Sequence record: PP355768.1
DNA: 33,000 nucleotides
Strand: one strand, 5' to 3'
The notes under the pieces are model-generated. The model was not told the origin of the DNA and ran no database searches. It was given only the letters and a program-made list of their open reading frames with translations. The translations under genes and the position numbers were made by a program. The stretch's first letter is position 1; each line of letters opens with the position of its first letter. Shown in pieces: positions 1 through 33,000 of the stretch.

Positions 1-1
1 C

Positions 2-175
2 GGTGACCGTACTTATGACGACTGGACTGTTACCATCTATAACGATGATAAACATGAAGTACGTAAGGCAATTATTGCTTGGCAGGCTCAGGCCCACGCC
101 CAAGGCAATGATATCTCTGGTATGACTCCAGCTGATTACAAAAAGGTTGCTACTGTACGCCAGTTTAGTCGTGAT
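2..175 (+). CDS. gp19: Tail tube protein, internal fragment
   Basis: Translates GDRTYDDWTVTIYNDDKHEVRKAIIAWQAQAHAQGNDISGMTPADYKKVATVRQFSRD, matching T4 gp19 GDRTFDDWTVT...VRQYARD. Confidence 0.92.
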
Positions 176-299
176 TTGTGCACAAATTTTCAAATAATTT
201 TAGGGAATCTGGAAGGACTTTATGGAGGGTAGAATGGATTTATACAGCTTGGTATATAGAAATGCCCAGACGACCTCTAGAAGGCATCTGGGCTATAAA

Positions 300-833
300 T
301 TACAGTTTCTTATAATGGCGACCAACATCACCAACGTAGTGTGTCAGTTGCTTCAAACGATTACCGAAATCTTCTGTTTTAGAACTAGTGCTTAAACCAT
401 ACAGTACTGCATATAAATCAGGGGTATCACGTACGTTAACTTTAGATGCGATTGACGGGTCAACAGATGCAACTACTTTTGCATGGAGTTTAGCAGATAA
501 TGCCGCAGCTTTTTCGTATGCAGTGTGAACATCATCCCATGCTTTATTCAGTGCTTTAACATCAGCGTCGCTAAGAACAGATGACTTTTTAGCAGCTTTA
601 GGTTTAGCAGTGCCTGACTTTGGTTTAGTAAAAATTTCACCAGTTACAACCATTGATTTCCATGCGTTTGTAACATCGTTGCCGCGGAATCCAAGTTCTT
701 TCATATCACGTGCGAATTGGAATCGTGATTCATCGGAAGTATCTTTGTATGAGTATTTTCCAGCTTCCATAGCTGATATAGCCGCAGCTTTAACATCAGA
801 AGAAGCTTCTATTAAAAATTCTTTAAATTTCAT
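300..833 (-). CDS. Putative capsid-targeted internal head protein (177 aa)
   Basis: N-terminus MKFKEFLIEA resembles the T4 capsid targeting sequence (MKTYQEFIAE, cleaved after E). Late promoter upstream; K/A-rich linker. Confidence 0.6.
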   Translation of the reverse strand: MKFKEFLIEASSDVKAAAISAMEAGKYSYKDTSDESRFQFARDMKELGFRGNDVTNAWKSMVVTGEIFTKPKSGTAKPKAAKKSSVLSDADVKALNKAWDDVHTAYEKAAALSAKLHAKVVASVDPSIASKVNVRDTPDLYAVLYGLSTSSKTEDFGNRLKQLTHYVGDVGRHYKKL

Positions 834-868
834 TATAATTCCCTAAGTAATAGTGTCGATTGCTATAC

Positions 869-876
869 TATTTATA
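869..876 (-). promoter_or_regulatory. T4 late (gp55) promoter TATAAATA
   Basis: Exact TATAAATA on the minus strand about 36 nt upstream of the ATG at 833. Confidence 0.85.
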
Positions 877-900
877 CTAAAAAGCCCCGTCCGAAGACGG
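877..900 (-). terminator. Rho-independent terminator with cUUCGg loop, 5' arm truncated by a junction
   Basis: Minus strand reads CCGTC-TTCG-GACGG-GGCTTTTT, a typical T4 UUCG terminator. Confidence 0.75.
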
Positions 901-957
901 CTATTATAGGTGACTTCCACTCACTTGATAAGGGTTCGATTCCCTTTGGATGCTCCA
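899..957 (+). tRNA. tRNA-Gly(TCC), 3' two-thirds only
   Basis: Anticodon arm GTGA-CTTCCAC-TCAC, T loop GGTTCGATTCC, ends GGATGCTCCA. 5' acceptor strand is missing at the junction. Confidence 0.8.
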
Positions 958-980
958 AATTGTGACTCGTCGAGAGACGC

Positions 981-1003
981 TCGGTTCTTTTAATAGGAAC
1001 TGA
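981..1003 (+). promoter_or_regulatory. Hairpin occluding the RBS of the downstream endonuclease
   Basis: TCGGTTCTT(981-989) pairs with AGGAACTGA(995-1003): 9 bp including G-U pairs, covering the AGGA Shine-Dalgarno. Confidence 0.5.
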
Positions 1004-1004
1004 T

Positions 1005-1654
1005 ATGCATTACTATCTTTATAAAATTACAAATAAAATAAATCAAAAGTTTTATATTGGAGTTCATTCTACTTCTAAGTTGGAAGATGGATACATGGGT
1101 TCTGGTAAGAATTTAAAGCGTGCTATTAAAAAGTACGGCAAAGAAAATTTTGAAAAAGAAATTCTCGAAACTTTTGATAATGCTAAAGATATGTATGATG
1201 CGGAAAGACACCTAGTAAATGAAGAATTTATTAAAAGGCCTGATACATATAACTTAAAGCTTGGTGGTGAAGGCGGATGGGACCACATATGTAATAATGA
1301 AATCTTGTCCGAACAACGAAGAACTAATATGTCAAAAGTTGGAAAATCTTGTGCTAATAAACCTTTATCAGATGAGCATAAGAAAAAGATTTCAAAATCA
1401 GTGAAATCCTTGGATTTACCTACATGGAAAGATAATATGGCTGGTAAGCCAAGCGGATTTGCAGGAAAACACCATTCGGCTGAATTCAAGAAAAAGATAT
1501 CCGAATTAAACTTAGCTAGAGTTAGTACAGATGAAAGAGCTTACAGAATGGAAATTTCTAAATTATATGATTTTTCTAAAAGAGGCGAATTATCTAAATA
1601 TGCTAAACACATTGGTGTAAGTCACACTCAAGCAAGAAGAATTTTAAATCACAT
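1005..1654 (+). CDS. Seg-like GIY-YIG homing endonuclease with NUMOD3-type repeats (3' end lost at a junction near 1654)
   Basis: YLYKITNKINQKFYIGVH...GYMGSG...YNLKLGGEGG; SDEHKKKIS and GKHHSAEFKKKIS motifs; sits directly after tRNA-Gly. Confidence 0.88.
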
Positions 1655-1678
1655 ATACACCTCATCAGTTAGTAATAG

Positions 1679-1686
1679 TATTTATA
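1679..1686 (-). promoter_or_regulatory. T4 late promoter TATAAATA (probably for rI, whose ATG at 1654 is cut by the junction)
   Basis: TATAAATA, then GAGG (1660-1663) and ATG (1654-1652), downstream of the rI.-1-like gene as in T4. Confidence 0.75.
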
Positions 1687-1700
1687 TAAGTATGTGTTAC

Positions 1701-2084
1701 TTAATCCCAAAGCCATTCGCAGATGCCTTGCTCAATAGTTCTAGCACCAGCTTCGTCCCAGTTATATTCTTCGTCATACTTCAATGCGCGTTTAATTTCG
1801 GCTTTATGAAATAAACGCGGAATCGGCATAGCATAACGGGTCCAACGTAGAGTTTTCCAGAATCCATCGCGCTTTGATTTAGCAATCAGTTTCTTGGCCT
1901 CTAGCGGTCTTTCCCGATTTTCAGAAATACGCAGTTCAACATATTTCTGTTGGGTTTCTTTATCTTTCTGAGTTTTAACGTATTCGTTATAGCTTTTAAT
2001 ATAAGCAAATTCGTTATTATTCTGATCGTTCCATTTGGAAGATTTTACTACATGCCAGCCTTTACGGCGAATTGTTCTAGACAT
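1701..2084 (-). CDS. Conserved T4-like hypothetical protein, rI.-1-like
   Basis: MSRTIRRKGWHV...FWKTLRW...YNWDE, with RBS GAGG; recalled similarity to T4 rI.-1. Confidence 0.75.
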   Translation of the reverse strand: MSRTIRRKGWHVVKSSKWNDQNNNEFAYIKSYNEYVKTQKDKETQQKYVELRISENRERPLEAKKLIAKSKRDGFWKTLRWTRYAMPIPRLFHKAEIKRALKYDEEYNWDEAGARTIEQGICEWLWD

Positions 2085-2147
2085 TATTACCTCGTTAAGT
2101 TAAAGTACCTCAACGATAGTAAAATCCTGATTTAAAAAATTTAATAT

Positions 2148-2282
2148 TCATGAATAGATTACCTTACATTTACATTTTGGACATTCAGGTTCTTTATTTT
2201 TAAGACGCTTGGTAGCTGTCTTTGGAGCAGTGTTGTAATCATATACATGAAGACAACGGTAGCACATCACATATTTTTTCAT
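2148..2282 (-). CDS. Small zinc-ribbon protein (44 aa)
   Basis: MKKYVMCYRCLHVYDYNTAPKTATKRLKNKEPECPKCKCKVIYS has two CxxC pairs. Confidence 0.7.
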   Translation of the reverse strand: MKKYVMCYRCLHVYDYNTAPKTATKRLKNKEPECPKCKCKVIYS

Positions 2283-2283
2283 A

Positions 2284-2376
2284 TTAAACCATCAACGAAA
2301 GCAATATTACGTACAGCAAGAATCCAATTATGAGTACTAGTACTATACCACTTGCTATGGCAAATAAGCTACTCAT
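2284..2376 (-). CDS. Small single-pass membrane peptide (30 aa)
   Basis: MSSLFAIASGIVLVLIIGFLLYVILLSLMV; tightly packed between its neighbours. Confidence 0.55.
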   Translation of the reverse strand: MSSLFAIASGIVLVLIIGFLLYVILLSLMV

Positions 2377-2394
2377 GTTTAATATAACACCCAT

Positions 2395-3111
2395 TCAATT
2401 TTCTCTCAATTTAAATTCGTTTATCATAGAACCATACGGCTCATCTGGATAACCATTCTTTACAGCTAACTTATTAAATCTTCTATACCCAACTTTACCA
2501 TTATTTTTCCATAGCAAATACAGCTCTTCGAAAAATTTCCAATTCTCGAGGTGTGCACGTTTAGCTGCCTTAATTCCTGCGATATGCCGTGCCTTTACGT
2601 CACTTCTTGCTAATGCCTTAATTGTATTATTTCTTTGTTTTTCTTTTACTTCTGGACGCTGTTGGGATAACTTAGACGCCATCCCATTACGAGCTTTTAC
2701 TATAGGATTTGATAAAGTTTTCTTCATTGAAGCTGACACTTTATCTCTATGGCCAGGAGTAGCCCAAAGCTTTTTAGCATGATTAGAATTCTTTACGCGA
2801 GTACTTTTATAAACAGTTCCACCTTCACCGCCATCAGATAAATTCATACATAATGAACCATACTTAATTTTACCAGCTTTAATGTATAATGCTTCTGCGT
2901 TAGAAGCAAGTTCATACGTACTAAAGAATTCAAGTTTTCTTACACTAATCTTATATCGTTCAGGATACTTTTTAACATGCCGCATATAATATCCTGAACC
3001 TGAATATGAATCGTTTAATCTATTACTTCTGTGTTTTCCGAAGTAGTGTTTAACTACTCCGGTCTTAAGATTTTCTATCTCAGTGTGATAAATGTAATTA
3101 TATTTTTTCAT
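2395..3111 (-). CDS. Seg-like GIY-YIG homing endonuclease (probable start 3111)
   Basis: MKKYNYIYHTEIENLKTGVVKHYFGKH...YSGSG...CMNLSDGGEGG; basic DNA-binding C-terminus. Confidence 0.82.
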   Translation of the reverse strand: MKKYNYIYHTEIENLKTGVVKHYFGKHRSNRLNDSYSGSGYYMRHVKKYPERYKISVRKLEFFSTYELASNAEALYIKAGKIKYGSLCMNLSDGGEGGTVYKSTRVKNSNHAKKLWATPGHRDKVSASMKKTLSNPIVKARNGMASKLSQQRPEVKEKQRNNTIKALARSDVKARHIAGIKAAKRAHLENWKFFEELYLLWKNNGKVGYRRFNKLAVKNGYPDEPYGSMINEFKLREN

Positions 3112-3702
3112 AATATTGCTGAATACTGCATTGGTCATTGGGAGCTTAATGGCTTTTATTTTTATAAAGGAATGAAATCTCATGGGCTGGAACCAGATTT
3201 CCTCAAAAAGTACAAACAAGTATGGTCTGGGCACTTCCACACCATATCAAGCGCAGCAAACGTTAAGTACATCGGAACGCCTTGGACGCTTACAGCGGGT
3301 GACGAGAACGACCCACGCGGCTTCTGGGTTCAAGACACTGAATTATCAACCTTTGATTTCGTCCCTAATGAAATCACTTGGCACAGAAAACTGATTTATC
3401 CTGTTACTGGAAAAATTGACTTTGAAGAGTTTCGTAATCTCGCAGTACGCATTATTATCACTGCGGTCGATGAAGACCTTCCTAAGTTTGAATCAGAACT
3501 TGAAAAGGTAGTACATGAATTAAGAACTGTTTCTAAAGTTGACAACTCGGTTGAGTCTGAAGATGGTGAAGAAGTAGAAGTTAAAAGCTTATTGGATTTA
3601 ATGGAAGAATATATCCAAGCACTTGAAGACCTATCCGCAGATGATATCAAAGCCTTAAAGGTTATGTCTAAACAGTTATACATTGAGGCACAAAATCAGT
3701 GA
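3112..3702 (+). CDS. gp47: Recombination endonuclease subunit (Mre11-like), C-terminal fragment
   Basis: GHWELNGFYFYKGMKSHGLEPDFL...WSGHFHT...GDENDPRGFW, as in T4 gp47. Confidence 0.95.
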   Translation, partial: NIAEYCIGHWELNGFYFYKGMKSHGLEPDFLKKYKQVWSGHFHTISSAANVKYIGTPWTLTAGDENDPRGFWVQDTELSTFDFVPNEITWHRKLIYPVTGKIDFEEFRNLAVRIIITAVDEDLPKFESELEKVVHELRTVSKVDNSVESEDGEEVEVKSLLDLMEEYIQALEDLSADDIKALKVMSKQLYIEAQNQ

Positions 3703-3750
3703 AGACTTTTAAACTAAACCGTGTCAAATATAAGAATATAATGTCAGTTG
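3699..3750 (+). CDS. gp46: Recombination ATPase subunit (Rad50-like), first 17 codons
   Basis: GTG start overlapping the gp47 stop; MKTFKLNRVKYKNIMSV; then a junction. Confidence 0.85.
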
Positions 3751-4438
3751 ATTATGTTGGCGCTGATGGCGGTGGTGAACCTGAAGACATCGAGCGTATT
3801 CGTGAGCTCGCCCAGATTAAGCGCGAATCTCAAATGCGTTGCGTGTCTAAAACTGACTATGAATCATTCGTTAGTTCACGCTTTGGTTCTATCGTACAAG
3901 CAGTACAGTGCTTTACCGACCAAGATAAGCCAGGGTATGCGTTTATTGCAATTAAGCCAAAATCTGGACTGCAGTTAACCGCTGTTCAAAGAGAAGACAT
4001 CCAAGATTATCTTCGTCCATTCTGTCTTGCTCCCATTACCCCTTCGGTAATGAGCCCAGATTACTTATTCATTCGTCATAATATTAAAGCCTCTTATGCG
4101 CTGAATAAGTTACAAGAATCAGAACAGTGGTTACAGTCAAAAATTATAGACTCAATTAATAGATATTACGTTGATGAAGTTGAAATGTTCAACAAAAATT
4201 TCAGTAAATCTAAGTTGTTGACTTACATTGATGACACTGACCATTCAATCATTGGTTCTTCTGTGGATATTCAGATGGTTCGTGAAATTGTCAACTATTT
4301 CACTCTTCCTAGCGCAGGTATTAAATACTATAATACTATTACTCCGCGGACGTTACGTTCTGGTGATTTGGTCTTTACTGTTACCCCAACTGCTGAACCG
4401 TATTCAGTTAATATCGTTGGAACTGACCCAGATAAAAA
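3748..4438 (+). CDS. gp6: Baseplate wedge subunit, internal fragment
   Basis: GADGGGEPEDIERIREL...KPGYAFIAIKPKSG...LQESEQWL, as in T4 gp6. Confidence 0.95.
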
Positions 4439-4439
4439 T

Positions 4440-4635
4440 GTGGAGTTGGGTCGTTAATAGTAATGATTTTGTTTGTCAGCAAATCAATTACGGCAGTAAT
4501 TCCACACATTTCAAGGTCATCTTCATTAAGTACAGAAATGACTTGGAACTTAAATCCCGGAATGAACATAGGAAATTGTTCGCTCAGTTCATCATCATTC
4601 TCAATAACTTCAAACTGCTTACCAATAAGTCCCAT
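4440..4635 (-). CDS. Hypothetical protein, N-terminal fragment
   Basis: MGLIGKQFEVIENDDELSEQFPMFIPGFKFQV; overlaps the upstream stop; cut at a junction near 4440. Confidence 0.6.
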
Positions 4636-4777
4636 TCACTTTGTCCTCATAATCAAGTAATTCGTTTATAGTAGGTTCAGAGGTATTATAATCCTCTTCA
4701 GGAATAGCATCTTCCTCTGGCTCGACAGTTTCCCATCGAGCCGCATACCAGGGTTTTAGACCTTTGCTACTTTGCAT
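4619..4777 (-). CDS. Small acidic protein, modA.4-like (52 aa)
   Basis: MQSSKGLKPWYAARWETVEPEEDAIPEEDYNTSEPTINELLDYEDKVNGTYW; recalled PWYxARWETVEPEE motif. Confidence 0.65.
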   Translation of the reverse strand: MQSSKGLKPWYAARWETVEPEEDAIPEEDYNTSEPTINELLDYEDKVNGTYW

Positions 4778-4945
4778 GGTGTTGGTTCAGAATCATTAGC
4801 AGAATCATGTTCAATACGCCATTCAACTTCAGTGCGAGTAACCACTTTTTCATGACGAGTAACGATATCTACTTCAGGAGGACTATAATACCAATCAGTA
4901 TGATATGAACCTGAACGGGATTCTGATACCATGAAATGAACAGGA
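4756..4945 (-). CDS. modA.3-like hypothetical protein, C-terminal fragment
   Basis: VSESRSGSYHTDWYYSPPEV motif; upstream pieces are at 26205-26495. Confidence 0.6.
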
Positions 4946-4956
4946 AATAGAAGAAG

Positions 4957-5226
4957 ATGTTCACGGTTTTTGGTTACGACAGCAGCATCCATAAATGTGT
5001 ATTTTGTGATAATGCAAAACGACTACTCGATGTTAAGAAGCAAGAATATGCATTCATCAATGTAATGCCAGAAAAAGGCGTATTTGATGAAGTTGTTATC
5101 AGTGATTTGCTTCGCCGTTTAGGTCGTGAATCACAGGTTGGATTAACTATGCCTCAGATTTTTGCTCCTGACGGTACACATATCGGCGGTTTTGATGAAC
5201 TCCGTAAATTCAAATTCAATGCATGA
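4957..5226 (+). CDS. nrdC: Glutaredoxin/thioredoxin
   Basis: MFTVFGYDSSIHKCVFCDNAKRLL...TMPQIFAPDGTHIGGFDEL; CxxC active site; matches T4 NrdC. Confidence 0.95.
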   Translation: MFTVFGYDSSIHKCVFCDNAKRLLDVKKQEYAFINVMPEKGVFDEVVISDLLRRLGRESQVGLTMPQIFAPDGTHIGGFDELRKFKFNA

Positions 5227-5407
5227 TTATCGTGGAACCCTCCTTCGGGAGGGTGATATTGTAGCCCTTTATTATGGCTATGGTGGATTAGAAACCGGCG
5301 AGATTAAACAAATCAAAAATCATCGGGCAAAGGTAGAGGTAACTTACTCTAATGGAGTTAAAGTTATGTCTAAATGGAAATACGGCGAGTGTATGGTTAA
5401 ATTATGA
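5219..5407 (+). CDS. Hypothetical protein (62 aa)
   Basis: MHDYRGTLLREGDIVALYYGYGG...; ATG overlaps the nrdC 3' end. Confidence 0.7.
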   Translation: MHDYRGTLLREGDIVALYYGYGGLETGEIKQIKNHRAKVEVTYSNGVKVMSKWKYGECMVKL

Positions 5408-5425
5408 TTAACATGAGGAAGAACT

Positions 5426-5596
5426 ATGAGTTATGATATTGGCGATTTAAAAGCTCCACGCATGGTAACTATTTCAGCAGAAGAGCTTGAACGCTTGCAA
5501 GCAATTGAAGAATTGCTGTGGGAAATTGAATGTGCGCTTCCGTCTGGTTTAGAAAGCTGGATTGATGATGAAGATTTACAGAAGCTGCGAGGTTAA
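5426..5596 (+). CDS. Conserved T4-like hypothetical protein (56 aa)
   Basis: RBS GAGG; MSYDIGDLKAPRMVTISAEELERLQAIEELLWEIECALPSGLESWIDDEDLQKLRG. Confidence 0.7.
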   Translation: MSYDIGDLKAPRMVTISAEELERLQAIEELLWEIECALPSGLESWIDDEDLQKLRG

Positions 5597-5659
5597 AATG
5601 ACTAACGCTGAATTAGTAAAAGAAATCAAGCATATCGCTGGCGTCACTGGTGGATATTT

Positions 5660-5746: not shown

Positions 5747-5748
5747 AA

Positions 5749-5825: not shown

Positions 5826-5844
5826 AATTTATGAGGATAAAATT

Positions 5845-26495: not shown

Positions 26496-26496
26496 C

Positions 26497-26790: not shown

Positions 26791-26792
26791 AA

Positions 26793-27085: not shown

Positions 27086-27087
27086 TC

Positions 27088-27240: not shown

Positions 27241-27395
27241 ATGTACTTGGGTATCGTTTGTCAGATTACCAAGTCCGACGTCAGCCTTAGATGGCTTATT
27301 TGCTGTGCCGTAGAGAACATTAGAATTTACTCTTCCACTTGCTAAACCACTATCGTTTATAGCAAATACTCTGACATTACCAGTTGCGACAGGAC
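27240..27395 (-). CDS. Long tail fibre fragment
   Basis: LYGTANKPSKADVGLGNLTND motif. Confidence 0.7.
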
Positions 27396-27527
27396 CTAAG
27401 GTTCGTGGCGCTTGGATTGATAAGAACAGTGCTTCGTGGAACGTATTACTTGATTCTCGTGGGTCCTTATCAGGTATATGGGAAACAGGCTTTAATTTGG
27501 TTGTTTTTGGGCTAGCAGAGCCTAGTA

Positions 27528-27845
27528 AGCTCAAGGTGATACATTAAAAGGTTCAGCTTCTCCCAAAATTTTCAACACTAACTTCCAAGATTTGGAATTA
27601 GTTTATTGCGCACCTGGCCGCTGGGAATACATTGAAAATAAAACAGTAGACAAGCTAACTAATGGCACCATTAGTTAGCTTATCTACAGTTTTATTTTCA
27701 ATATATTCCCAGCGGCCAGGGGCGCAATAAACCAATTCCAAATCTTGGAAGTTAGTATTGAAAATTTTAGGAGAAGCTGAACCCTTTAATGTATCGCCTT
27801 GAGCAATTGGCGGTACAACATTTAGAGCAAATGTTAAAACCGTAG
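27528..27845. CDS. gp10: gp10 N-terminal region, two alleles (27528-27675 on +, 27670-27845 on -)
   Basis: GDTLKGSASP...FQDLELVYCAPGRWEY; leads into the piece ending at 7525. Confidence 0.92.
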
Positions 27846-28345
27846 ATGACAAGCCTGTGTGGGAAGGCCCAGGGTTTTATTCTCATGGCGCAGGATTCTT
27901 TTCTAGAACTGGCGATACAATGTCTGCGCTTAATATAGATTACACATGGGCGTACTCTTGCCATTTACACTAAAGATGAAGCCGATAACGTTGTTCAGCT
28001 TGCAGGTAAAGGGGTTCCTTTCTTAGATACCTCCGGAACTCTTAGCGTTGATGGAACTACTACATTAAAAGACAACGTACTGGGAACTAATAAGACTGTT
28101 AAAATTAATAGTGGAAGCTCTCTTGTCCTTGAAATGGGCGTAGGTTCTAATGACGCATACATTAAAAACCTGAGAGGAACTGGTGTTCTTCAATTAACCA
28201 ATGACAGTAATCTGACGTTCAGAAAATCTGTAAATTGCTGTCATTAGTTAATTGAAGAACACCAGTGCCTCTTTGGTTTTTAATATAGACGTCGTTAGAG
28301 CCTACACCCATTTCAAGAACAAGAGTGCTTCCACTGTTAATTTTA
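27845..28345. CDS. gp37: gp37 fragments, including an inverted allele pair near 28080-28345
   Basis: GRTLAIYTKDEADNVVQLAGKGVPFLDTSGTL; LVLEMGVGSNDxYIKN on both strands. Confidence 0.75.
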
Positions 28346-28351
28346 ACAGTC

Positions 28352-28905
28352 TTATTGGTAGATAACCCCATTAATAGTTGCTGTACTTGATACAGTCAAA
28401 GCTCTAGAAACTGCTGAGTTTCCATAAACTGTTTGGTTTCCATCTGCGTCAACTTTAAACACATCAGTGTAAGTTTCCGAAGCTGGATTAGCTATGGCGA
28501 TTCCATCAACACTGAGAGTACCAGAAGTATCTAAAAATGGAACACCTTTACCAGCTAACTGTACTACGGCATCATTTTCATCTTTAGTATAAATGGCAAG
28601 AGTACGACCATGTGTGTTCAACGCGATTTCAGTGGTATCACCGAAATCTGGTTTTGCATAACTATCAAAAATCTGTTTCATTGAAACAAGAATGCTTCCA
28701 GATGGTGCAGTAGCACCAGTGTCCTGATTGGTTTCATAGATAATTACTTTACCGCTATCTTGACCGTTGTATCTTGAGTAATATCTACTACTGATTTTCC
28801 GTTACCACCAATACCGAAGGCACCAACTTCCATCACATTTCCGCTAGATTCACCGACATCACGAACAGCTGCAGTACCTAAACCTAAGTTATTTCGAGCG
28901 TCTCC
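28352..28905 (-). CDS. Concatenated long-tail-fibre allelic fragments (gp34/gp37)
   Basis: ASETYTDVFKVDAD; EIALNTHGRTLAIYTKDENDAVVQLAGK; MKQIFDSYAKPDFGD; DARNNLGL. Confidence 0.7.
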
Positions 28906-29165
28906 TCGTTGTTCTGTCCTTTATCGTTGCGGTAGCGCTTGGAATTGTCGCCGTGTTCGGATTCGGAATTTATTTTGCCATTAATGCGATTGATATTATT
29001 CAAACTGATGGCCTTAAATCCTTAGTAGAAACCGTATGTTGTTCTGTCTTTTATCGTTGCGGTAGCGCTGGGAATTGTAGCTATATTCGGGTTCGGAATT
29101 TATTTTGCTATTCAAGCAGTTGATATTATTCAGACCGATGGCCTTAAATCTTTAGTAGAAACCGT
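28905..29165 (+). CDS. Membrane protein (trna.4-like), two tandem alleles
   Basis: FIVAVALGIVAxFGFGIYFAI...IIQTDGLKSLVETV; cf. recalled T4 trna.4 HQNGLKSVVETIW. Confidence 0.6.
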
Positions 29166-29430
29166 GGTCTTCATAAATGTCAACACCAGCTAAAGCCCCA
29201 GTATATTGAGGGTACTGATGATTAAAGTCCCCTTTATCATACCAAATGCCTGAATTTTCAGGATATTGCTCGAGGTTATAATAACGATTGCCGTTTATCT
29301 TCGTAAATGTCAACGCCAGCCAAAGCGCCAGTATATTGAGGATACTGATGATTAAAGTCACCTTTATCATACCAAACACCTGAATTTTCAGGGTACTGTT
29401 CTAGATTGTAATAACGATTGCCGTACGCAT
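29165..29430 (-). CDS. gp53: gp53 fragment, two tandem alleles
   Basis: YYNLEQYPENSGxWYDKGD...YPQYTGALAGVDIYE; continues at 17241. Confidence 0.88.
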
Positions 29431-29439
29431 CCGTACATT

Positions 29440-29695
29440 CACTCAGGCGATTGGCATTTAGGTGTCCGCGCAGATGACCCGTGGGTACAGGATGTACAAC
29501 GACACGGAATTAAGCAGCATATTGATTATGCCAAAAAGCATGGAATTAAAACTATCATTCAATACATACTGAATCCAAGTAGTGATTTCATTTTCTTTTG
29601 AATATTCAATCGCCTGTTGAATTCCATGACGTTGAACGTCTTGAACCCACGGGTCATCGTTGCGGACACCTAAGTGCCAATCGCCAGTATGTAGG
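29440..29695. CDS. gp47: gp47 N-terminus, two alleles (29440-29565 on +, 29568-29695 on -)
   Basis: GDWHLGVRxDDPWVQDVQRHGI on both strands. Confidence 0.9.
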
Positions 29696-30187
29696 GCTAA
29701 TGCTTCCCATACGCTTAAATCATATAAAGGTAATCCTTTGCTTTCTCGCGCGAAGTTAAGAACATCAATGGAACGAATGGGTTCTTCGATAGGAATAACC
29801 TTTGATAATTTTACTGAAATAGACTTGGTGGTACAGTGTTCAGAGCCAACACAGCGAGTGGTTATACTGGGGCTCCTTATTACTCCCATGGCACCGGGTT
29901 TTATGGAAGAGCTTCTGACACAATGGCTGCGCTTAATATAGATTATTCCAGGAGACGCATCTTCGCAACTGGATTTAATGATTACTGGCGGCATTGATTC
30001 CGGACATGGCAAACACTACGTTGATTTTATCACGTTATCTGGTCGCAATTTAACGTCCTGGAGCACTAGGTCTGCATCAACTTTAAACACATCAGTATAA
30101 GTCTCAGAAGCCGGATTACTTATAGCAGTTGCTGACGATTTAGCAACAGTGAATGTTTTTCCTGAAGCAAAGACCAGTTTAGAACCT

Positions 30188-30455
30188 GCACCACGGAACG
30201 GTTTACCAAATAAGGCAAAAGTAATAGCTTCGAGCATAGTACTTTTGCCACCACCATTCTTACCTGTGATTAAGGTCTTTTGGCATTTATCAAGTTGAAT
30301 GTCAATGGCCGCTTGGCCGCTTGGCCAGCCGCTGCGAAATGGTTTTCCAAATAGAGCAAAGGTGATGGCTTCAAGCATAGTACTTTTACCTCCACCATTC
30401 TTGCCCGTGATTAAGGTCTTTTGACATTTATCAAGTTGAATGTCAATAGCCGCCA
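30188..30455 (-). CDS. gp46: gp46 Walker A region, two tandem alleles
   Basis: KTLITGKNGGGKSTMLEAITFALFGKPFR, twice. Confidence 0.93.
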
Positions 30456-30683
30456 TTCGTATTACAAAATGTTTTAGCAATACGAAGTGAATCCGACATT
30501 GAATTTTCAGCATTAACAGAGAATGCCAATACTAATCCAAGAACCGCGGCGTACTTTATCATTATTCCACCTTTAGTTCGTATTGCAAAATGTTTTAGCG
30601 ATACGAAGTGAATCTGTCATTGAATTTTCAGCATTAGCAGAGAATGCCAATACCAATCCAAGAAGCGCGGCGTACTTTACCAT
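30455..30683 (-). CDS. Signal-peptide protein (possibly Vs-like), two tandem N-terminal alleles (starts 30562, 30683)
   Basis: MIKYAAVLGLVLAFSVNAENSMSDSLRIAKTFCNTN. Confidence 0.5.
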
Positions 30684-30694
30684 TATTCCACCTT

Positions 30695-30822
30695 TGTAAT
30701 TGCTCAGCATTCATATACACTTGGTCGGTTTCTGCCATGATATCATCAATATCCATAGTAGTACCGATGTTATTATTGAACCAACGGACGGTAAGAAGGT
30801 CTTTATCTTCAAACGCCGTGTA
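30695..30822 (-). CDS. gp10: gp10 fragment
   Basis: LTVRWFNNNIGT...IMAETDQVY (T4 ITWFNNDLGT...IIDETDNLY). Confidence 0.8.
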
Positions 30823-31060
30823 TTGATGTTCCAAAGGATGGGATGTGTTCAATTGGAAATCTTACAAGCAAAGATGAATGTATTAAGCTTGGAGGTAAAT
30901 GGACACCATCAGCTATTTCAGGTTCAGCTCCTCGTGGTATGTATTGATGTTCCAAAGAATGGAATGTGTTCAATTGGTAATCTTACAAGCAAAGAAGAAT
31001 GTATTAAGCTTGGGGGTAAATGGACACCATCCACTATTTCCGGTTCAGCGCCTCGTGGGA
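30818..31060 (+). CDS. gp8: gp8 fragment, two tandem alleles
   Basis: CIDVPKxGMCSIGNLTSKxECIKLGGKWTPS...SAPRG; continues at 23077. Confidence 0.9.
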
Positions 31061-31297
31061 AGCCAACGTTATCGGTGCTCCAGAAGGTGCAACTGGGGTT
31101 TATTCTTGGACCAAAGACGGTTCACCTGTAGAAGGCTCAACAAGCACGTTAGTGATTGACACATCTGATATAGGGTCTCAGCTGCTGTTACTGGAGCGCC
31201 CGCGGGAGCATCTGTGGCTTACTCATGGACCAAAGACGGTTCTCCTGTAGAAGGTTCTACTAGCACTTTAGTGATTGACACGTCTGATATAGGGTCC
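31060..31297 (+). CDS. hoc: Hoc Ig-like domain, two tandem alleles
   Basis: GAPxGAxxxYSWTKDGSPVEGSTSTLVIDTSDIG, twice. Confidence 0.75.
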
Positions 31298-31404
31298 TAT
31301 AATCTCTAGAGCTGTTAAAATGGAACTGACTTCCATCTTCAATATCAACGCGCCAATTTACATTAAAATTCCCACTGCCTTCTAAAACGATGGCATCATT
31401 ATAA

Positions 31405-31530
31405 CCGTCCCATTCCATGGGCGTACTCTCGCTATCTACACCAAAGATGAAGCTGATAACGTTGTTCAGCTCGCCGGTAAAGGTGTTCCTTTCTTAGATA
31501 CTTCCGGCACTCTTACCGTTAATGGAATTT
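31405..31530 (+). CDS. gp37: gp37 N-terminal region, third allele
   Basis: GRTLAIYTKDEADNVVQLAGKGVPFLDTSGTLTVNG. Confidence 0.8.
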
Positions 31531-31650
31531 AAAGGAAATATGGTCATTGGACCATTTAAACCAGGTGATATTAAAGAGAATACTCATATTCAGCCATATA
31601 CTGAAGACGATTTTGATAGAACTACTAATGGAGAAAGAACTCGTTAAGTT
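31530..31650 (+). CDS. gp6: gp6 fragment
   Basis: KGNMVIGPFKPGDIKENTHIQPYTEDDF; follows the piece ending at 4438. Confidence 0.8.
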
Positions 31651-31651
31651 C

Positions 31652-31870
31652 AGCGATCCAGATGACCAAGCATACGCTGACAGATTAACTCCTATTGAAG
31701 ACTTCCGTCGTCAGAAAGAATTCATGGATTCTTATCTTGATTCCTGTGATTACGACCAAGTTCAGTGACCCAGATGACCAAGCATATGCAGACAGACTGA
31801 CCCCTTCTGAAGATTTCCGCCGTCAACAAGAATTTATGGATTCTTATCTTGACAGTTGTGATTATGATTG
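31652..31870 (+). CDS. Acidic hypothetical protein, two tandem alleles
   Basis: FSDPDDQAYADRLTPxEDFRRQxEFMDSYLDSCDYD, twice. Confidence 0.6.
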
Positions 31871-31871
31871 G

Positions 31872-31978
31872 AAATACAGAATTCTTCTTTGGTGAAGGTG
31901 TGGCAGAAGCATCCGTGGCAGGAGGAGTTCTTGAAAGCAACTTCATTGGTGGATTAAAACCCACTAAAGGCGCGCAAG
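31872..31978 (+). CDS. gp6: gp6 fragment
   Basis: NTEFFFGEG...NFIGGLKPT; follows MRETV at 21818. Confidence 0.85.
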
Positions 31979-32205
31979 TCTAAAGGAATTGAAGACTCAT
32001 ATAAGTTCCTGTTTAAACTTCTTTATAACGAAGACGTCGAAATCGATATTGAGTCAAAGAACACTACCGAATATGACATTATTGTTGAAAGCCAAAGGAA
32101 TTGAAGACTCATACAAGTTCTTGTTTAAACTTCTTTATAATGAAGACGTTGAAATTGACATCGAGTCGAAGAATACGACAGAATATGACATTATTGTAGA
32201 GAGTT
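31978..32205 (+). CDS. gp7: Baseplate wedge initiator, two tandem alleles
   Basis: KGIEDSYKFLFKLLYNEDVEIDIES...EYDIIVES (T4 KGIEASYKFLFKVLYNEEV). Confidence 0.9.
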
Positions 32206-32339
32206 TAGTAAACGTAGTGTTTCAAGGAAACTATGCAGTTCTGCCTAAAGCTGATGTAGAGCCGACAGAATCACAGCGTCAAGGTTTAGTTTAAAAAATT
32301 GTTTACTTTACTACAAGGATGTGCTACATAATTTGTTCA

Positions 32340-32437
32340 AGCATCAGACCAATAATTCAGAACCAAAGGCAGGTGACCTGATTTATTTCCCGATGGATAA
32401 TTCGCTGTTTGAAATTAATTGGGTTCAACCATATGAT
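32340..32437 (+). CDS. gp14: gp14 internal fragment
   Basis: [26 protein letters not shown]. Confidence 0.9.
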
Positions 32438-32439
32438 TT

Positions 32440-32558
32440 CTCGTTTGGAAAAGATTCGTGAGTATGAAAAAACTATCACATCAATTAAAACTAACTTACG
32501 TAATCGCGAAAATCATCTTTCTCAATTTGTGCAAAAAGAAAAGAATGGAAGAATAGTA
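32440..32558 (+). CDS. srd: Srd internal fragment
   Basis: [29 protein letters not shown]; plausibly follows SDKE at 19950. Confidence 0.6.
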
Positions 32559-32670
32559 AATGTGTTCGCGCCGAAGGTTTTAGATTCGTTGCCGATAGCA
32601 TCCCATTGCCCATAACCTGCTTTAGCTGGTGAAGTAATAGTAAATTCAACAGTTAAACCATACTTTTTAT
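32558..32670 (-). CDS. gp11: Baseplate wedge/tail pin fragment
   Basis: KYGLTVEFTITSPAKAGYGQWDAIG (T4 [25 protein letters not shown]). Confidence 0.7.
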
Positions 32671-32674
32671 ATGT

Positions 32675-32900
32675 TACATACCATGGCGAACGCGATTGAA
32701 TATGTTCATCATGATTTGCCTTTACCTGGCGTGGTTTATGATAACAAACGTAAAATACTTGACGGTGATACGATGGAAGTCATCCGTATATGGCGAATGC
32801 TATTGAATATGTCCATCATGATTTGCCTTTACCTGGGGTGGTTTATGATAGCAAGCGTAAAATTCTTGACGGCGATACGATGGAAGTCATCCGTCCAAGC
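32675..32900 (+). CDS. Unassigned protein, two tandem allelic fragments
   Basis: MANAIEYVHHDLPLPGVVYDxKRKILDGDTMEVIR, twice. Confidence 0.55.
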
Positions 32901-33000
32901 TATGTTAGTAGAAAGCGTTCATTCTATTGATATTCTGAATTCCGTGAGGCAGCACAGAGGATTACCTGTGTATGATTTAAGCGCATGGGAAGCATTAGCT

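What the first reader, a model, noticed from the sequence alone, without database searches (positions are those of the whole stretch)
1..33000. The window is a stitched pangenome superstring of T4-like phages, not a genome segment
Seen: genes are shattered and scattered yet reassemble. gp13 = 7556-8141(+) + 26497-26790(+) + 8857-9066(-). gp6 is in at least six places, srd in three, and gp8, gp10, gp46, gp47 and gp53 in several. Joins occur mid-codon-run at micro-overlaps (gp46 to gp6 at CAGTTG 3745-3750; a UUCG terminator runs into tRNA-Gly at about 899). Fragments tend to get shorter along the window. Variant pieces end where alleles become identical. Inference: de Bruijn unitigs or bubbles compacted into a superstring, or a similar in-silico concatenation. 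This governs how every other signal here should be read.
Basis: partly seen in the sequence, partly recalled or inferred. Interest (0 to 1): 0.85.

Follow-up and report, generated by a model that had tools for sequence, protein, structure and literature searches.

The report
Concatenated assembly contigs, not a genome
This 33-kb window is the tail of a GenBank "complete genome" that is really a mixed-phage assembly's leftover contigs pasted end to end roughly by length, so its gene order, joins and many annotated proteins are artefacts.

Summary
The window is identical to the last 33,000 nt of GenBank PP355768.1 (Klebsiella phage vB_Kpn_AM_K6, 261,044 bp, labelled "complete genome"). That record has two parts: about 108.7 kb of a T5-like Sugarlandvirus, then about 152 kb of pieces of T4-like Jiaodavirus.

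The window tiles into about 125 blunt-ended pieces on the reference phage Mineola:
- They lie on both strands and at scattered loci.
- Their length falls from about 750 to about 100 nt.
- At least 29 loci are present twice, as one Mineola-like allele and one about 85% allele, mostly side by side. The arms of three pairs checked base by base start and end exactly on a mismatch.

gp13 reassembles from three pieces into a 314/314-residue match. About 145 other phage genomes carry both halves of each tested join, but only this record spans the joins. A sister record holds the same pieces in a different order.

Three details are not supported: "pangenome", "superstring" and "micro-overlaps". There are two alleles per locus, not many. 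The joins are blunt (mean overlap 0.4 nt). The order roughly follows length.

This is an artefact of low biological interest, but it matters for database hygiene.

The parts
1..175 (+). end of an 821-nt piece that begins before the window (gp18/gp19 region)
   Evidence: Mineola 97718-98535, 98%
175..900 (+). piece: hyp134 plus a terminator cut inside its stem
   Evidence: Mineola 64327-65053, 98%
897..1651 (-). piece: tRNA-Gly lacking its first 14 nt, plus segB lacking its 3' end
   Evidence: Mineola 68273-69027, 99.6%; K4 100%
1652..2397 (+). piece: hyp106-hyp108
   Evidence: Mineola 53313-54059, 99%
2398..3116 (+). piece: homing-endonuclease gene segment absent from Mineola
   Evidence: 100% in K4, 95-96% in 6 other Jiaodavirus records, matching end to end
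3117..3750 (-). piece: gp47/gp46 internal
   Evidence: Mineola 29880-30513, 92%
3749..4440 (+). piece: gp6 internal
   Evidence: Mineola 79344-80035, 93%; only TG shared at the join
4439..4942 (+). piece: pin/49.1/49.2
   Evidence: Mineola 40384-40887, 97%
4942..5653 (-). piece: 49.2 to nrdC.1
   Evidence: Mineola 41035-41746, 95%
5653..6369 (+). piece from the second strain: tRNA-Leu, tRNA-Arg and a T5orf172-domain ORF
   Evidence: K4 tail 4077-3361, 100%; contiguous there with window 10708-11181
6369..6877 (+). piece: hyp273/hyp272
   Evidence: Mineola 66996-67525, 96%
6878..7529 (-). piece: gp10 internal
   Evidence: Mineola 85934-86585, 97%
7528..8142 (+). piece: gp13 5' part (CDS starts at 7556)
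   Evidence: Mineola 91107-91721, 99%; L013 4331-3717
8142..8649 (-). piece: hyp271/hyp270/tRNA-Pro part
   Evidence: Mineola 67695-68205, 93%
8652..9063 (-). piece: gp13 3' part (9063-8857) plus the start of gp14
   Evidence: Mineola 91870-92281, 98%; L013 3568-3153
9064..9635 (-). allele 1 of the nrdC.1/hyp078 locus (572 nt)
   Evidence: 99.5% to vB_KpnM_GF and PMBT63; the 1117-nt query collapses onto about 560 nt in other genomes
9636..10180 (-). allele 2 of the same locus (about 545 nt)
   Evidence: Mineola 41955-42141, 72%
10180..10708 (+). piece: gp5 internal
   Evidence: Mineola 76136-76664, 93%
10708..11181 (-). piece from the second strain: tRNA-Thr and flank
   Evidence: K4 tail 3361-2888, 100%
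11182..11611 (+). mrh allele, Mineola-like
   Evidence: Mineola 12634-13063, 97%; Pfam T4_MRH
11612..12048 (-). mrh allele, divergent, in the opposite orientation
   Evidence: Mineola 12611-12969, 69%; K4 100%; Pfam T4_MRH
12049..12472 (.). unassigned stretch, no match to Mineola or the K4 tail
   Evidence: ORF 12032-12460 has no Pfam hit
12473..12895 (+). piece: hyp227/hyp226
   Evidence: Mineola 108171-108593, 95%
12895..13267 (+). piece: hoc part
   Evidence: Mineola 108847-109219, 97%
13268..13628 (+). gp46 bubble arm A (361 nt)
   Evidence: Mineola 29317-29677, 99.4%; 100% in K2
13629..13989 (+). gp46 bubble arm B (361 nt)
   Evidence: 85% to Mineola; 100% to KP01; first and last bases mismatch arm A
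13994..14358 (-). piece: srd/modB
   Evidence: Mineola 11437-11801, 100%
14354..14701 (+). piece: modB internal
   Evidence: Mineola 11832-12179, 99%
14697..15053 (-). gp9 arm, divergent
   Evidence: Mineola 84486-84839, 81%
15029..15379 (+). gp9 arm, Mineola-like, in the opposite orientation
   Evidence: Mineola 84486-84834, 98%
15395..15713 (-). hyp070/pin arm, Mineola-like
   Evidence: Mineola 39833-40151, 98%
15716..16036 (-). hyp070/pin arm, divergent
   Evidence: Mineola 39970-40167, 68%; K4 98.9%
16037..16358 (.). piece absent from Mineola
   Evidence: K4 tail 31091-31412, 100%
16357..16652 (+). piece: internal virion protein gene
   Evidence: Mineola 71570-71864, 98%
16653..16946 (+). 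piece: divergent motB-like allele
   Evidence: K4 100%; Mineola 7825-7975, 78%
16947..17246 (+). piece: modB end/modA.2/mrh start
   Evidence: Mineola 12309-12609, 98%
17240..17514 (+). piece: gp53 end/gp5 start
   Evidence: Mineola 75714-75988, 94%
17513..17801 (+). piece: tk part
   Evidence: Mineola 54163-54451, 88%
17802..18080 (.). piece absent from Mineola
   Evidence: K4 98.9%
18081..18360 (-). piece: gp37 tail fibre
   Evidence: Mineola 154461-154740, 92%
18362..18640 (+). piece: hyp091
   Evidence: Mineola 47568-47846, 95%
18636..18917 (+). piece: regA part
   Evidence: Mineola 24983-25264, 96%
18918..19186 (-). piece: tRNA-Thr (Mineola-like) and flank
   Evidence: Mineola 65153-65334, 99%; K4 99.6%
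19186..19453 (+). piece: gp37
   Evidence: Mineola 153689-153956, 96%
19454..19714 (+). piece: motB-like
   Evidence: Mineola 7716-7976, 99.6%
19715..19950 (-). piece: srd internal
   Evidence: Mineola 11191-11426, 94%
19950..20174 (+). piece: gp8 3' end
   Evidence: Mineola 84271-84495, 98%
20175..20387 (-). piece: gp36/gp37
   Evidence: Mineola 153323-153535, 98%
20388..20595 (+). gp23 arm A
   Evidence: Mineola 102985-103190, 99.5%
20596..20804 (+). gp23 arm B
   Evidence: Mineola 102984-103191, 85%
20805..21016 (+). gp18 arm B
   Evidence: Mineola 97515-97725, 88%
21017..21216 (+). gp18 arm A
   Evidence: Mineola 97514-97712, 100%
21217..21420 (+). piece: arn.3/hyp146
   Evidence: Mineola 160876-161079, 97%
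21424..21635 (-). piece: hyp275/hyp274
   Evidence: Mineola 66630-66843, 98%
21623..21819 (+). piece: gp6 internal
   Evidence: Mineola 78916-79112, 91%
21820..22014 (+). vs.4 arm 1
   Evidence: Mineola 57413-57528, 84%
22015..22203 (+). vs.4 arm 2
   Evidence: Mineola 57414-57529, 86%
22204..22380 (.). unassigned piece
   Evidence: no Mineola match
22381..22553 (+). piece: gp37
   Evidence: Mineola 154698-154870, 92%; K4 100%
22556..22726 (-). hyp272/hyp271 divergent piece
   Evidence: Mineola 67529-67697, 84%
22779..22903 (+). hyp271 divergent piece
   Evidence: Mineola 67574-67697, 80%
22902..23074 (-). piece: tRNA-Arg and tRNA-Leu
   Evidence: Mineola 65335-65507, 90%
23079..23251 (+). piece: gp8 internal
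   Evidence: Mineola 83995-84167, 98%
23252..23415 (+). gp36 arm
   Evidence: Mineola 152942-153105, 85%
23416..23744 (.). one or two pieces absent from Mineola
   Evidence: 23581-23744 is 99.4% in K4
23743..23909 (-). piece: rI.1
   Evidence: Mineola 53148-53314, 98%
23909..24075 (+). piece: gp37
   Evidence: Mineola 154092-154258, 89%
24071..24240 (+). piece: gp6 internal
   Evidence: Mineola 78751-78919, 96%
24236..24395 (+). hyp123 arm A
   Evidence: Mineola 60349-60508, 96%
24394..24554 (+). hyp123 arm B
   Evidence: Mineola 60348-60507, 83%
24557..24721 (+). gp12 arm B
   Evidence: Mineola 88018-88182, 87%
24723..24882 (+). gp12 arm A
   Evidence: Mineola 88016-88175, 100%
24884..25194 (-). 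nrdC.1 divergent pieces (two copies) plus an unassigned 83 nt
   Evidence: Mineola 41751-41906 at 72% and 41835-41906 at 81%
25195..25370 (-). gp39 arm B
   Evidence: Mineola 5093-5268, 86%
25375..25531 (-). gp39 arm A
   Evidence: Mineola 5110-5266, 100%
25532..25714 (-). gp47 arm B
   Evidence: Mineola 30579-30761, 85%
25719..25882 (-). gp47 arm A
   Evidence: Mineola 30600-30763, 100%
25888..26036 (-). gp36 arm
   Evidence: Mineola 152958-153106, 89%
26037..26197 (-). weak gp6-like piece with unassigned flanks
   Evidence: 26080-26166 maps to Mineola 78777-78863, 76%
26198..26344 (+). 49.2 arm 1
   Evidence: Mineola 40888-41041, 93%; K4 100%
26345..26492 (+). 49.2 arm 2
   Evidence: Mineola 40887-41035, 95%
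26493..26640 (+). gp13 middle segment, arm A (148 nt)
   Evidence: Mineola 91722-91869, 100%; completes gp13 at 314/314 aa
26641..26788 (+). gp13 middle segment, arm B (148 nt)
   Evidence: 85% to Mineola; first and last bases mismatch arm A
26789..26932 (+). hyp226 arm A
   Evidence: Mineola 108593-108737, 96%
26934..27089 (-). hyp226 arm B, in the opposite orientation
   Evidence: Mineola 108581-108736, 89%
27091..27240 (+). piece: gp36
   Evidence: Mineola 153105-153254, 94%
27245..27387 (-). piece: gp37
   Evidence: Mineola 155028-155170, 98%
27388..27528 (.). unassigned piece
27529..27665 (+). gp10 arm B
   Evidence: Mineola 85797-85933, 93%
27667..27805 (-). gp10 arm A, in the opposite orientation
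   Evidence: Mineola 85796-85934, 99%
27806..27937 (.). unassigned piece
27938..28910 (.). seven gp37 tail-fibre pieces of 122-143 nt, on both strands
   Evidence: Mineola 153537-156844, 79-98%
28907..29038 (-). hyp139 arm A
   Evidence: Mineola 164621-164752, 96%
29038..29165 (-). hyp139 arm B
   Evidence: Mineola 164624-164751, 91%
29167..29296 (-). gp53 arm A
   Evidence: Mineola 75585-75714, 99%
29298..29432 (-). gp53 arm B
   Evidence: Mineola 75579-75713, 88%
29446..29564 (-). gp47 arm B
   Evidence: Mineola 30814-30932, 76%
29565..29694 (+). gp47 arm A, in the opposite orientation
   Evidence: Mineola 30812-30941, 100%
29695..29823 (+). piece: modB internal
   Evidence: Mineola 12180-12308, 100%
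29824..30188 (.). three gp37 pieces
   Evidence: Mineola 154266-156763, 84-98%
30194..30318 (+). gp46 second bubble, arm B
   Evidence: Mineola 29756-29880, 86%
30334..30454 (+). gp46 second bubble, arm A
   Evidence: Mineola 29755-29875, 99%
30455..30575 (+). vs arm A (121 nt)
   Evidence: Mineola 56075-56195, 99%
30576..30696 (+). vs arm B (121 nt)
   Evidence: 93% to Mineola; first and last bases mismatch arm A
30697..30817 (-). piece: gp10 internal
   Evidence: Mineola 86591-86711, 99%
30819..30937 (+). gp8 arm B
   Evidence: Mineola 83875-83993, 92%
30939..31059 (+). gp8 arm A
   Evidence: Mineola 83874-83994, 98%
31060..31180 (-). hoc arm A
   Evidence: Mineola 109218-109338, 98%
31187..31296 (-). 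hoc arm B
   Evidence: Mineola 109221-109330, 84%
31297..31415 (.). piece absent from Mineola
   Evidence: K4 100%
31416..31527 (+). piece: gp37
   Evidence: Mineola 153555-153666, 90%
31530..31645 (+). piece: gp6 internal
   Evidence: Mineola 80037-80152, 100%
31646..31756 (-). hyp102 arm 1
   Evidence: Mineola 51868-51978, 87%
31757..31867 (-). hyp102 arm 2
   Evidence: Mineola 51869-51979, 85%
31869..31980 (+). piece: gp6 internal
   Evidence: Mineola 79113-79224, 93%
31980..32091 (+). gp7 arm A
   Evidence: Mineola 82579-82690, 100%
32092..32204 (+). gp7 arm B
   Evidence: Mineola 82581-82691, 88%
32206..32327 (-). piece: cef/motB-like
   Evidence: Mineola 7548-7669, 92%
32329..32437 (+). 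piece: gp14 internal
   Evidence: Mineola 92439-92547, 100%
32439..32550 (-). piece: srd internal
   Evidence: Mineola 11079-11190, 97%
32539..32678 (-). piece: gp11 internal
   Evidence: Mineola 87807-87942, 95%
32683..32787 (-). gp1 arm 1
   Evidence: Mineola 72946-73050, 92%
32776..32895 (-). gp1 arm 2
   Evidence: Mineola 72945-73065, 96%
32903..33000 (-). last and shortest piece of the record (about 98 nt), a divergent modB allele
   Evidence: Mineola 12181-12270, 80%

Best explanation
The window is the last 33 kb of GenBank record PP355768.1. That record is not one genome. It is the full output (all pieces of about 100 nt or more) of one de novo assembly of a mixed phage preparation, pasted end to end in roughly descending length order and deposited as a 'complete genome'.

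The preparation held a T5-like Sugarlandvirus, which assembled cleanly into one contig of about 108.7 kb and forms the head of the record. It also held two variants of a T4-like Jiaodavirus. Because the two variants alternate between identical and roughly 85%-identical stretches, their co-assembly broke into an overlap-free graph. Shared segments appear once. Bubble arms appear twice, one per variant, each running exactly from the first to the last differing base.

Length ordering puts the shortest pieces last, and the window is that tail. It also puts most pairs of equal-length arms next to each other. The joins are blunt and have no biological meaning.

Shown: the identity with the record, the tiling, the allele pairs, the blunt joins, the approximate length order, and the absence of the joins from all other genomes. 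Inferred: the exact software and steps. These include a de Bruijn word size near 25, a 100-nt minimum length, and scaffold gaps closed without N. It is also only inferred that the two variants were really in the lysate rather than coming from cross-sample carry-over.
For: - Source record. The window is byte-identical to PP355768.1 228045-261044. Record positions 1 to about 108.7 kb are 97% identical to 109.6-111 kb Sugarlandvirus genomes. The T4-like matches begin at 108,789.
- Tiling. The window splits into about 125 pieces: 67 on the plus strand and 54 on the minus strand of Mineola. Only 2 of 120 neighbouring pairs are collinear, while 28 of 120 are the same locus twice.
- Length order. Spearman rho is -0.95 within the window and -0.92 across the 168 blocks of the T4-like part. 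Sizes run 18.9 kb, 4.3 kb and so on down to 98 nt, after the 108.7-kb Sugarlandvirus head.
- Bubble arms. In the three pairs checked in exact register, arms are equal in length, start and end on a mismatch, and abut with no spacer.
- Both gp46 arms are real alleles. Arm A is 99-100% identical to K2, KP1079 and Mineola. Arm B is 100% identical to KP01 and 99% to KP17 and TNG87. Each of those genomes has only one copy.
- Reference depth is 1x over 129 kb, 2x over 5.8 kb, 3x over 137 nt, with 31 kb absent.
- Joins are blunt: mean overlap 0.375 nt at 16 clean joins.
- True adjacency. The three gp13 pieces join to 314/314 aa. They lie contiguously in an independent 97-kb metagenome contig.
- Joins 3750, 8142 and 14703: about 145 records match both halves at separate places, and only PP355768.1 spans them.
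- Sister records. K4 carries the same pieces at 100% identity in a different order and orientation, with its tail falling from 1286 to 105 nt. K5 also has appended allele pairs.
- Coding signal. The longest ORF is 269-281 aa (by start-codon rule), and 48% of the window lies in ORFs of 100 aa or more, against 62-97% elsewhere. 39 of 67 annotated CDS span a join.
Against: - The length order is not strict. Early in the window the sizes run 722, 754, 746, 719, 634, 690, 502, 711. A plain sort of final contig lengths therefore does not fully explain the order.
- In the record's larger blocks, collinear pieces are butt-joined with 100-1,100 nt of the reference missing. This needs an extra step that I can only guess at, such as scaffold gaps closed without N.
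- I could not match the behaviour to one named assembler. For example, as I recall Unicycler's behaviour (not checked here), it trims half the overlap from each piece end, which would leave identical flanks on the arms. None are seen.
- No methods paper and no reads were available.
Confidence: 0.93

Rival explanations
1. The window is a pangenome superstring: unitigs from many T4-like genomes compacted by suffix-prefix overlaps into a shortest common superstring.
For: The pieces are overlap-free graph nodes, and variant arms end where the alleles converge. A few joins share 2-4 nt: TG at 3750 and ACGG at 897-900.
Against: - There are at most two alleles per locus nearly everywhere; 3x depth covers only 137 nt.
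- Mean overlap at clean joins is 0.375 nt, and most are 0. That is no more than chance extension would give.
- The order follows length, which overlap-driven merging would not produce.
- The string sits behind an unrelated 108.7-kb Sugarlandvirus contig in a single isolate's GenBank record.
- 31 kb of the reference is missing altogether.
Confidence: 0.03
2. It is the same concatenation artefact, but the second Jiaodavirus variant (and perhaps the Sugarlandvirus) was never in the K6 lysate. It entered through cross-sample carry-over or index hopping among the K1-K6 libraries.
For: Pieces are 100% identical to the sister records K4 and K2, which come from the same laboratory and host but from different water sources. 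K4 also contains a Sugarlandvirus, at 97.7% identity.
Against: The K4 Sugarlandvirus is only 97.7% identical to K6's, so that part is not simple carry-over. Without reads and depths, the two cases cannot be separated.
Confidence: 0.3
3. The window is a real, heavily rearranged or defective phage genome, or a recombinant concatemer packaged in vivo.
For: Only that the order exists in a database entry labelled 'complete genome'.
Against: - Essential genes (gp5, 6, 7, 8, 10, 13, 18, 23, 46, 47, 53) are cut into internal fragments on both strands.
- Internal gene fragments are duplicated as about 85% alleles side by side.
- Lengths are ordered.
- The record is 261 kb, while related genomes are 162-170 kb.
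- It fuses two virus families.
- No other genome shares any tested join.
Confidence: 0.01

Closest known systems
Multi-contig assembler output (length-sorted contigs or scaffolds of a de Bruijn-graph assembly) concatenated into one sequence
   Same: - Roughly descending length, a cut-off near 100 nt, and random strand.
- Blunt joins.
- Shared segments present once and bubble arms present twice.
- The same pieces in a different order in a sister assembly.
   Different: - The order is only approximately sorted.
- The arms carry no k-mer flanks at all. By my understanding of de Bruijn assemblers (not tested here), raw graph edges would overlap their neighbours by about k. So the overlaps were removed, or the assembler writes non-overlapping nodes.
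- Larger blocks look like scaffolds whose gaps were closed without N.
Strain-mixture fragmentation in co-assembly (two closely related genomes collapsing into shared nodes and bubbles)
   Same: - Identical and roughly 85%-identical stretches alternate.
- One arm is Mineola-like (96% or more) and the other divergent in about 21 of 28 pairs.
- Identical runs inside the arms stop at 24 nt, with one exception of 38 nt, as expected for a word size near 25.
   Different: Normally such contigs stay separate in a multi-FASTA file. Here they were fused and annotated as one genome.
Genuine Jiaodavirus genomes (for example Mineola NC_055748.1, 166,130 bp)
   Same: Every assignable piece is 68-100% identical to a Mineola locus. 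The pieces reassemble into normal genes, as gp13 does.
   Different: There is no synteny. Core genes are shattered, alleles are duplicated, 31 kb is missing, and the record is 261 kb long.

Membership tests
Contiguous segment of a Jiaodavirus (T4-like) genome | Collinear gene order with relatives | tested here: not met
   Only 2 of 120 neighbouring pieces are collinear on Mineola. Strands are mixed, 67 plus and 54 minus.
Contiguous segment of a Jiaodavirus (T4-like) genome | Intact core genes | tested here: not met
   gp5, 6, 7, 8, 10, 13, 18, 23, 46, 47 and 53 are present only as internal fragments. The longest ORF is 269-281 aa (by start-codon rule), against a median longest ORF of 902 aa in Mineola 33-kb windows.
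Contiguous segment of a Jiaodavirus (T4-like) genome | One allele per locus | tested here: not met
   At least 29 loci are present twice at about 85% against about 99% identity. Other genomes carry one copy.
Contiguous segment of a Jiaodavirus (T4-like) genome | Genome length within the range of the genus (about 162-170 kb in the records seen) | tested here: not met
   The source record is 261,044 bp and includes 108.7 kb of Sugarlandvirus.
Contiguous segment of a Jiaodavirus (T4-like) genome | Joins supported by independent sequences | tested here: not met
   At joins 3750, 8142 and 14703, only PP355768.1 spans, out of about 145 matching records. The 8142 junction 40-mer is absent from the metagenome collection, while the control 40-mer is present.
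Length-ordered concatenation of assembly contigs | Piece length decreases along the sequence down to a cut-off | tested here: met
   Spearman rho is -0.95 in the window and -0.92 across the T4-like blocks of the record. The last piece is about 98 nt. The decline is not strictly monotone.
Length-ordered concatenation of assembly contigs | Blunt joins with no more overlap than chance | tested here: met
   Overlaps at 16 clean joins are -1 to 4 nt, mean 0.375.
Length-ordered concatenation of assembly contigs | Pieces are nodes of an assembly graph (shared segments abut bubble arms exactly) | tested here: met
   Mineola coordinates abut at 91721|91722 and 91869|91870. Arms begin and end on mismatches.
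Length-ordered concatenation of assembly contigs | Reads do not span the joins | not testable with these tools
Shortest-common-superstring or compacted pangenome | Joins made at suffix-prefix overlaps exceeding chance | tested here: not met
   Mean overlap is 0.375 nt. The claimed CAGTTG is only TG.
Shortest-common-superstring or compacted pangenome | Many alleles per locus drawn from many genomes | tested here: not met
   Depth is 2x or less except for 137 nt.

The most novel reading that the evidence does not exclude
The artefact may preserve a real biological picture. One effluent sample would have yielded a Sugarlandvirus and two co-occurring Jiaodavirus lineages on the same Klebsiella host. 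The two lineages would be identical over tracts of up to several kb but about 15% divergent in interspersed tracts: the gp37 tail fibre, gp46/47, mrh, and a tRNA cluster with Leu and Arg in swapped order. That would be a recent recombination mosaic between co-circulating T4-like phages.
Probability: 0.35. Interest if true: 0.2.

Novelty: not a real feature. Interest (0 to 1): 0.1.

Why it matters
The window holds no biological discovery, but the finding matters for data hygiene.

- A 261-kb entry labelled "complete genome" and filed under Straboviridae fuses two phage families with shattered contigs.
- In this 33-kb tail alone, 39 of 67 deposited proteins read across artificial joins. They are therefore chimeric or truncated sequences now sitting in protein databases.
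- The record inflates apparent genome size, tRNA counts and gene duplications.
- The sister record K4, built the same way, is already reported as an abundant "species" in a virome study (PMC13589070).
- Any repeat, promoter, duplication or novel ORF signal found in this window should be discounted unless it lies wholly inside one piece.

Tried and rejected
- Exact 40-mer scans of IMG/VR found neither the 8142 junction nor an in-piece control, so they are uninformative. The metagenome collection did hold the control but not the junction.
- Paper searches for the K1-K6 names, their accessions, and the host plus region found no methods paper, only two downstream users.
- I tried to name the assembler and could not. 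A strict length sort does not fit the early part of the window. Half-overlap trimming, as I recall Unicycler does it (not checked here), would leave identical flanks on the arms, and none are seen. Sorting by span including removed gaps fits the order no better by the measures computed (Spearman -0.92 for both, 70 ascents for both).
- A word size near 25 is only suggested, by identical runs inside the arms stopping at 24 nt with one exception of 38 nt.
- I considered a real rearranged or defective genome and rejected it (see rival explanations).
- Pfam scans of ORFs in the stretches Mineola does not cover gave only T4_MRH (two alleles), GIY-YIG/SegE (SegB) and T5orf172 hits. There was nothing unusual.

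Full report
**Source of the window**

A megablast of window 1-25000 against 50,697 phage records found one full-length 100% match. It is GenBank PP355768.1, Klebsiella phage vB_Kpn_AM_K6, "complete genome", 261,044 bp, at positions 228045-253044. Window 25001-33000 matches 253045-261044. A direct string comparison shows the window equals record 228045-261044, the last 33 kb of the record. The best other genomes are all 162-170 kb Klebsiella T4-like phages. They cover only 21-25% of the query, in 12-20 separate pieces each.

**What the record is**

I fetched the whole record and the RefSeq Jiaodavirus Mineola, NC_055748.1, 166,130 bp.
- Record 20001-45000 is 97% identical, over its whole length, to 109.6-111 kb Sugarlandvirus genomes (T5-like) such as Roth49 and Sugarland.
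- T4-like matches start only at record position 108,789.
- The entry is therefore about 108.7 kb of one phage family followed by about 152 kb of pieces of another.
- Chaining collinear pieces gives 168 blocks in the T4-like part. After the 108.7-kb Sugarlandvirus head, their sizes fall from 18.9 kb through 4.3 kb, about 3.5 kb and about 2 kb to about 100 nt (Spearman -0.92).
- Mineola is covered once over 129 kb, twice over 5.8 kb, three times over 137 nt, and not at all over 31 kb.

**Checking the observation in the window**

Blastn against Mineola tiles the window into about 122 pieces. About 5.7 kb is left untiled. A test for alignments spanning each position, using Mineola, the K4 and K5 tails and the rest of K6, gives about 125 pieces.
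- The pieces map to scattered loci, 67 on the plus strand and 54 on the minus strand.
- Only 2 of 120 neighbouring pairs are collinear in the reference, while 28 are the same locus twice.
- Piece length falls from about 750 to about 100 nt (rho -0.95, p about 1e-61). The early part is noisy: 722, 754, 746, 719, 634, 690, 502, 711.
gp6 has five solid pieces and one weak one. srd has three. gp8, gp10, gp46, gp47 and gp53 have several each.
- gp37, the tail fibre, is the most fragmented, with about 16 pieces.
- gp13 maps as 7528-8142 to Mineola 91107-91721, 26493-26640 to 91722-91869, and 8652-9063(-) to 91870-92281. The three pieces abut exactly on the reference.
- Joining the coding parts gives 942 nt, no internal stop, and 314/314 residues identical to Mineola gp13.
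- The same three pieces are contiguous in an independent 97-kb metagenome contig, ERZ1026872 NODE_23 (L013 4331 to 3153).

**Allele pairs**

Neighbouring equal-length pieces are two versions of one locus. Typically one is 96-100% identical to Mineola and the other about 85% (about 21 of 28 pairs).
- In exact register the arms are equal in length, their first and last bases are mismatches, and they abut with no spacer. Examples are 26493-26640 with 26641-26788, 13268-13628 with 13629-13989, and 30455-30575 with 30576-30696.
- Both gp46 arms are natural alleles. Arm A is 99-100% identical to K2, KP1079 and Mineola. Arm B is 100% identical to KP01 and 99% to KP17 and TNG87. Each of those genomes has a single copy.
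- Window 9064-10180 is another such pair, 572 + 545 nt. In other genomes the whole 1117 nt collapses onto about 560 nt.
- Identical runs inside the arms stop at 24 nt, with one run of 38 nt. Shared stretches of 30-99 nt between bubbles are simply missing from the record. Together these suggest a graph with a word size near 25 and a 100-nt output cut-off. This is an inference.

**The joins**

At 16 joins where both sides match Mineola at 95% or better, the BLAST overlaps range from -1 to 4 nt. The mean is 0.375, and most are 0. I estimate that chance extension alone would give about 0.7 nt.
- At 3745-3750 only TG is common to the gp46/47 path and the gp6 path, not CAGTTG.
- At 897-900 ACGG is shared. 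By my estimate about one overlap of that length is expected by chance among roughly 125 joins.
- The "micro-overlap" sub-claim, and with it superstring compaction, is therefore not supported.
- The terminator-to-tRNA-Gly join is real. The hairpin's right arm is cut after GACGG, and the tRNA lacks its first 14 nt. ARAGORN does not call it.

**Independent support for the joins**

I queried 300 nt centred on each of joins 3750, 8142 and 14703. Each query matches 144-146 phage records, usually with the two halves at two separate places. Only PP355768.1 covers 80% or more of the query. The 8142 junction 40-mer is absent from the metagenome collection, while a control 40-mer 20 nt upstream is present. 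The IMG/VR scans were uninformative because the control was also absent.

**Sister records**

- The last 50 kb of K4 (PP355766.1, 288,685 bp) contains many of the same pieces at 100% identity, with the same ends but in a different order and orientation.
- Two K6 pieces that lie 4.3 kb apart in the window (5653-6369 and 10708-11181) are contiguous in K4.
- K4's tail also falls from 1286 to 105 nt over 120 pieces. K5 (174,364 bp) ends in appended allele pairs.
- K4 also starts with a Sugarlandvirus.
- The construction is therefore a habit of this submission series, not a property of a phage.

**Consequences for annotation**

- The longest ORF in the window is 269-281 aa, depending on the start-codon rule. 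The median longest ORF in Mineola 33-kb windows is 902 aa.
- Only 48% of the window lies in ORFs of 100 aa or more, against 62-97% elsewhere.
- 39 of the 67 deposited CDS in the window span at least one join. For example, 1005-1814 is SegB (GIY-YIG domain) running into an unrelated piece.

**Verdict**

It is wrong in the labels "pangenome" and "superstring".

The best explanation (confidence about 0.93) is as follows. The contigs or scaffolds from one assembly of a mixed lysate were concatenated in approximate length order and deposited as one genome. The lysate held a Sugarlandvirus and two Jiaodavirus variants.

Three things remain unknown:
- the exact software;
- why the order is only approximately sorted;
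- whether the second variant was really in the lysate or came from cross-sample carry-over.

No methods paper was found.

Biological interest is low. The value lies in flagging the record and its chimeric proteins. The sister record K4 is already cited as an abundant "species" in a virome study.

Noticed in passing
PP355768.1 1-108,700 (L002-L004): The head of the source record is a near-complete T5-like Sugarlandvirus genome, 97% identical to Roth49 and Sugarland. The record is filed under Straboviridae.
   Followed up: partly
L012 (PP355766.1 238686-288685) and L011 (PP355767.1 150001-174364): Sister records K4 and K5 are built the same way. K4's tail holds 120 pieces falling from 1286 to 105 nt, and K5 ends in appended allele pairs. 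K4 is reported as an abundant 'species' in a virome paper (PMC13589070). K1 and K2 were not tiled.
   Followed up: partly
window 5660-5825 vs 22908-23073; 10708-10783 vs 19005-19080: tRNA-Leu(taa), tRNA-Arg(tct) and tRNA-Thr(tgt) each occur twice. The order is Leu-Arg in one copy and Arg-Leu in the other. These look like two variants' versions of the tRNA cluster, with a real difference in gene order between the lineages.
   Followed up: partly
window 1005-1814 and 38 other annotated CDS: 39 of the 67 deposited CDS in the window span at least one artificial join. For example, WWS25347.1 is the N-terminal part of SegB fused to an unrelated tail. These chimeric proteins are now in public protein databases.
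   Followed up: yes
window 2398-3116: A 719-nt homing-endonuclease gene segment is found in only 10 phage records and is absent from Mineola. It forms a piece of its own, consistent with a presence/absence polymorphism between the two variants.
   Followed up: partly
window 5845-6627: An ORF with a T5orf172/MUG113 domain sits next to the second variant's tRNA genes and runs across the join at 6369. The real gene is cut by the end of its piece.
   Followed up: no
PP355768.1 about 109,000-228,000 (e.g. record 112,295-112,298 inside nrdA): In the larger blocks, collinear pieces are butt-joined with 100-1,100 nt of the reference missing; nrdA lacks 434 nt, for example. This looks like scaffold gaps closed without N. 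In all, 31 kb of the Jiaodavirus reference is absent from the record.
   Followed up: partly
window-wide (28 allele pairs): Identical runs inside the bubble arms stop at 24 nt, with one exception of 38 nt at 25195-25531. Shared stretches of 30-99 nt are missing from the record. Together these hint at a word size near 25 and a 100-nt output cut-off.
   Followed up: partly
window 18081-31527 (about 16 pieces): The gp37 long-tail-fibre gene is the most fragmented locus. This fits its being the most divergent region between the two co-assembled variants.
   Followed up: no
window 12049-12472, 22204-22380, 27388-27528, 27806-27937: Short stretches with no match to Mineola or the K4 tail. I did not trace their origin. 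They are probably divergent arms or accessory segments of the second variant.
   Followed up: no
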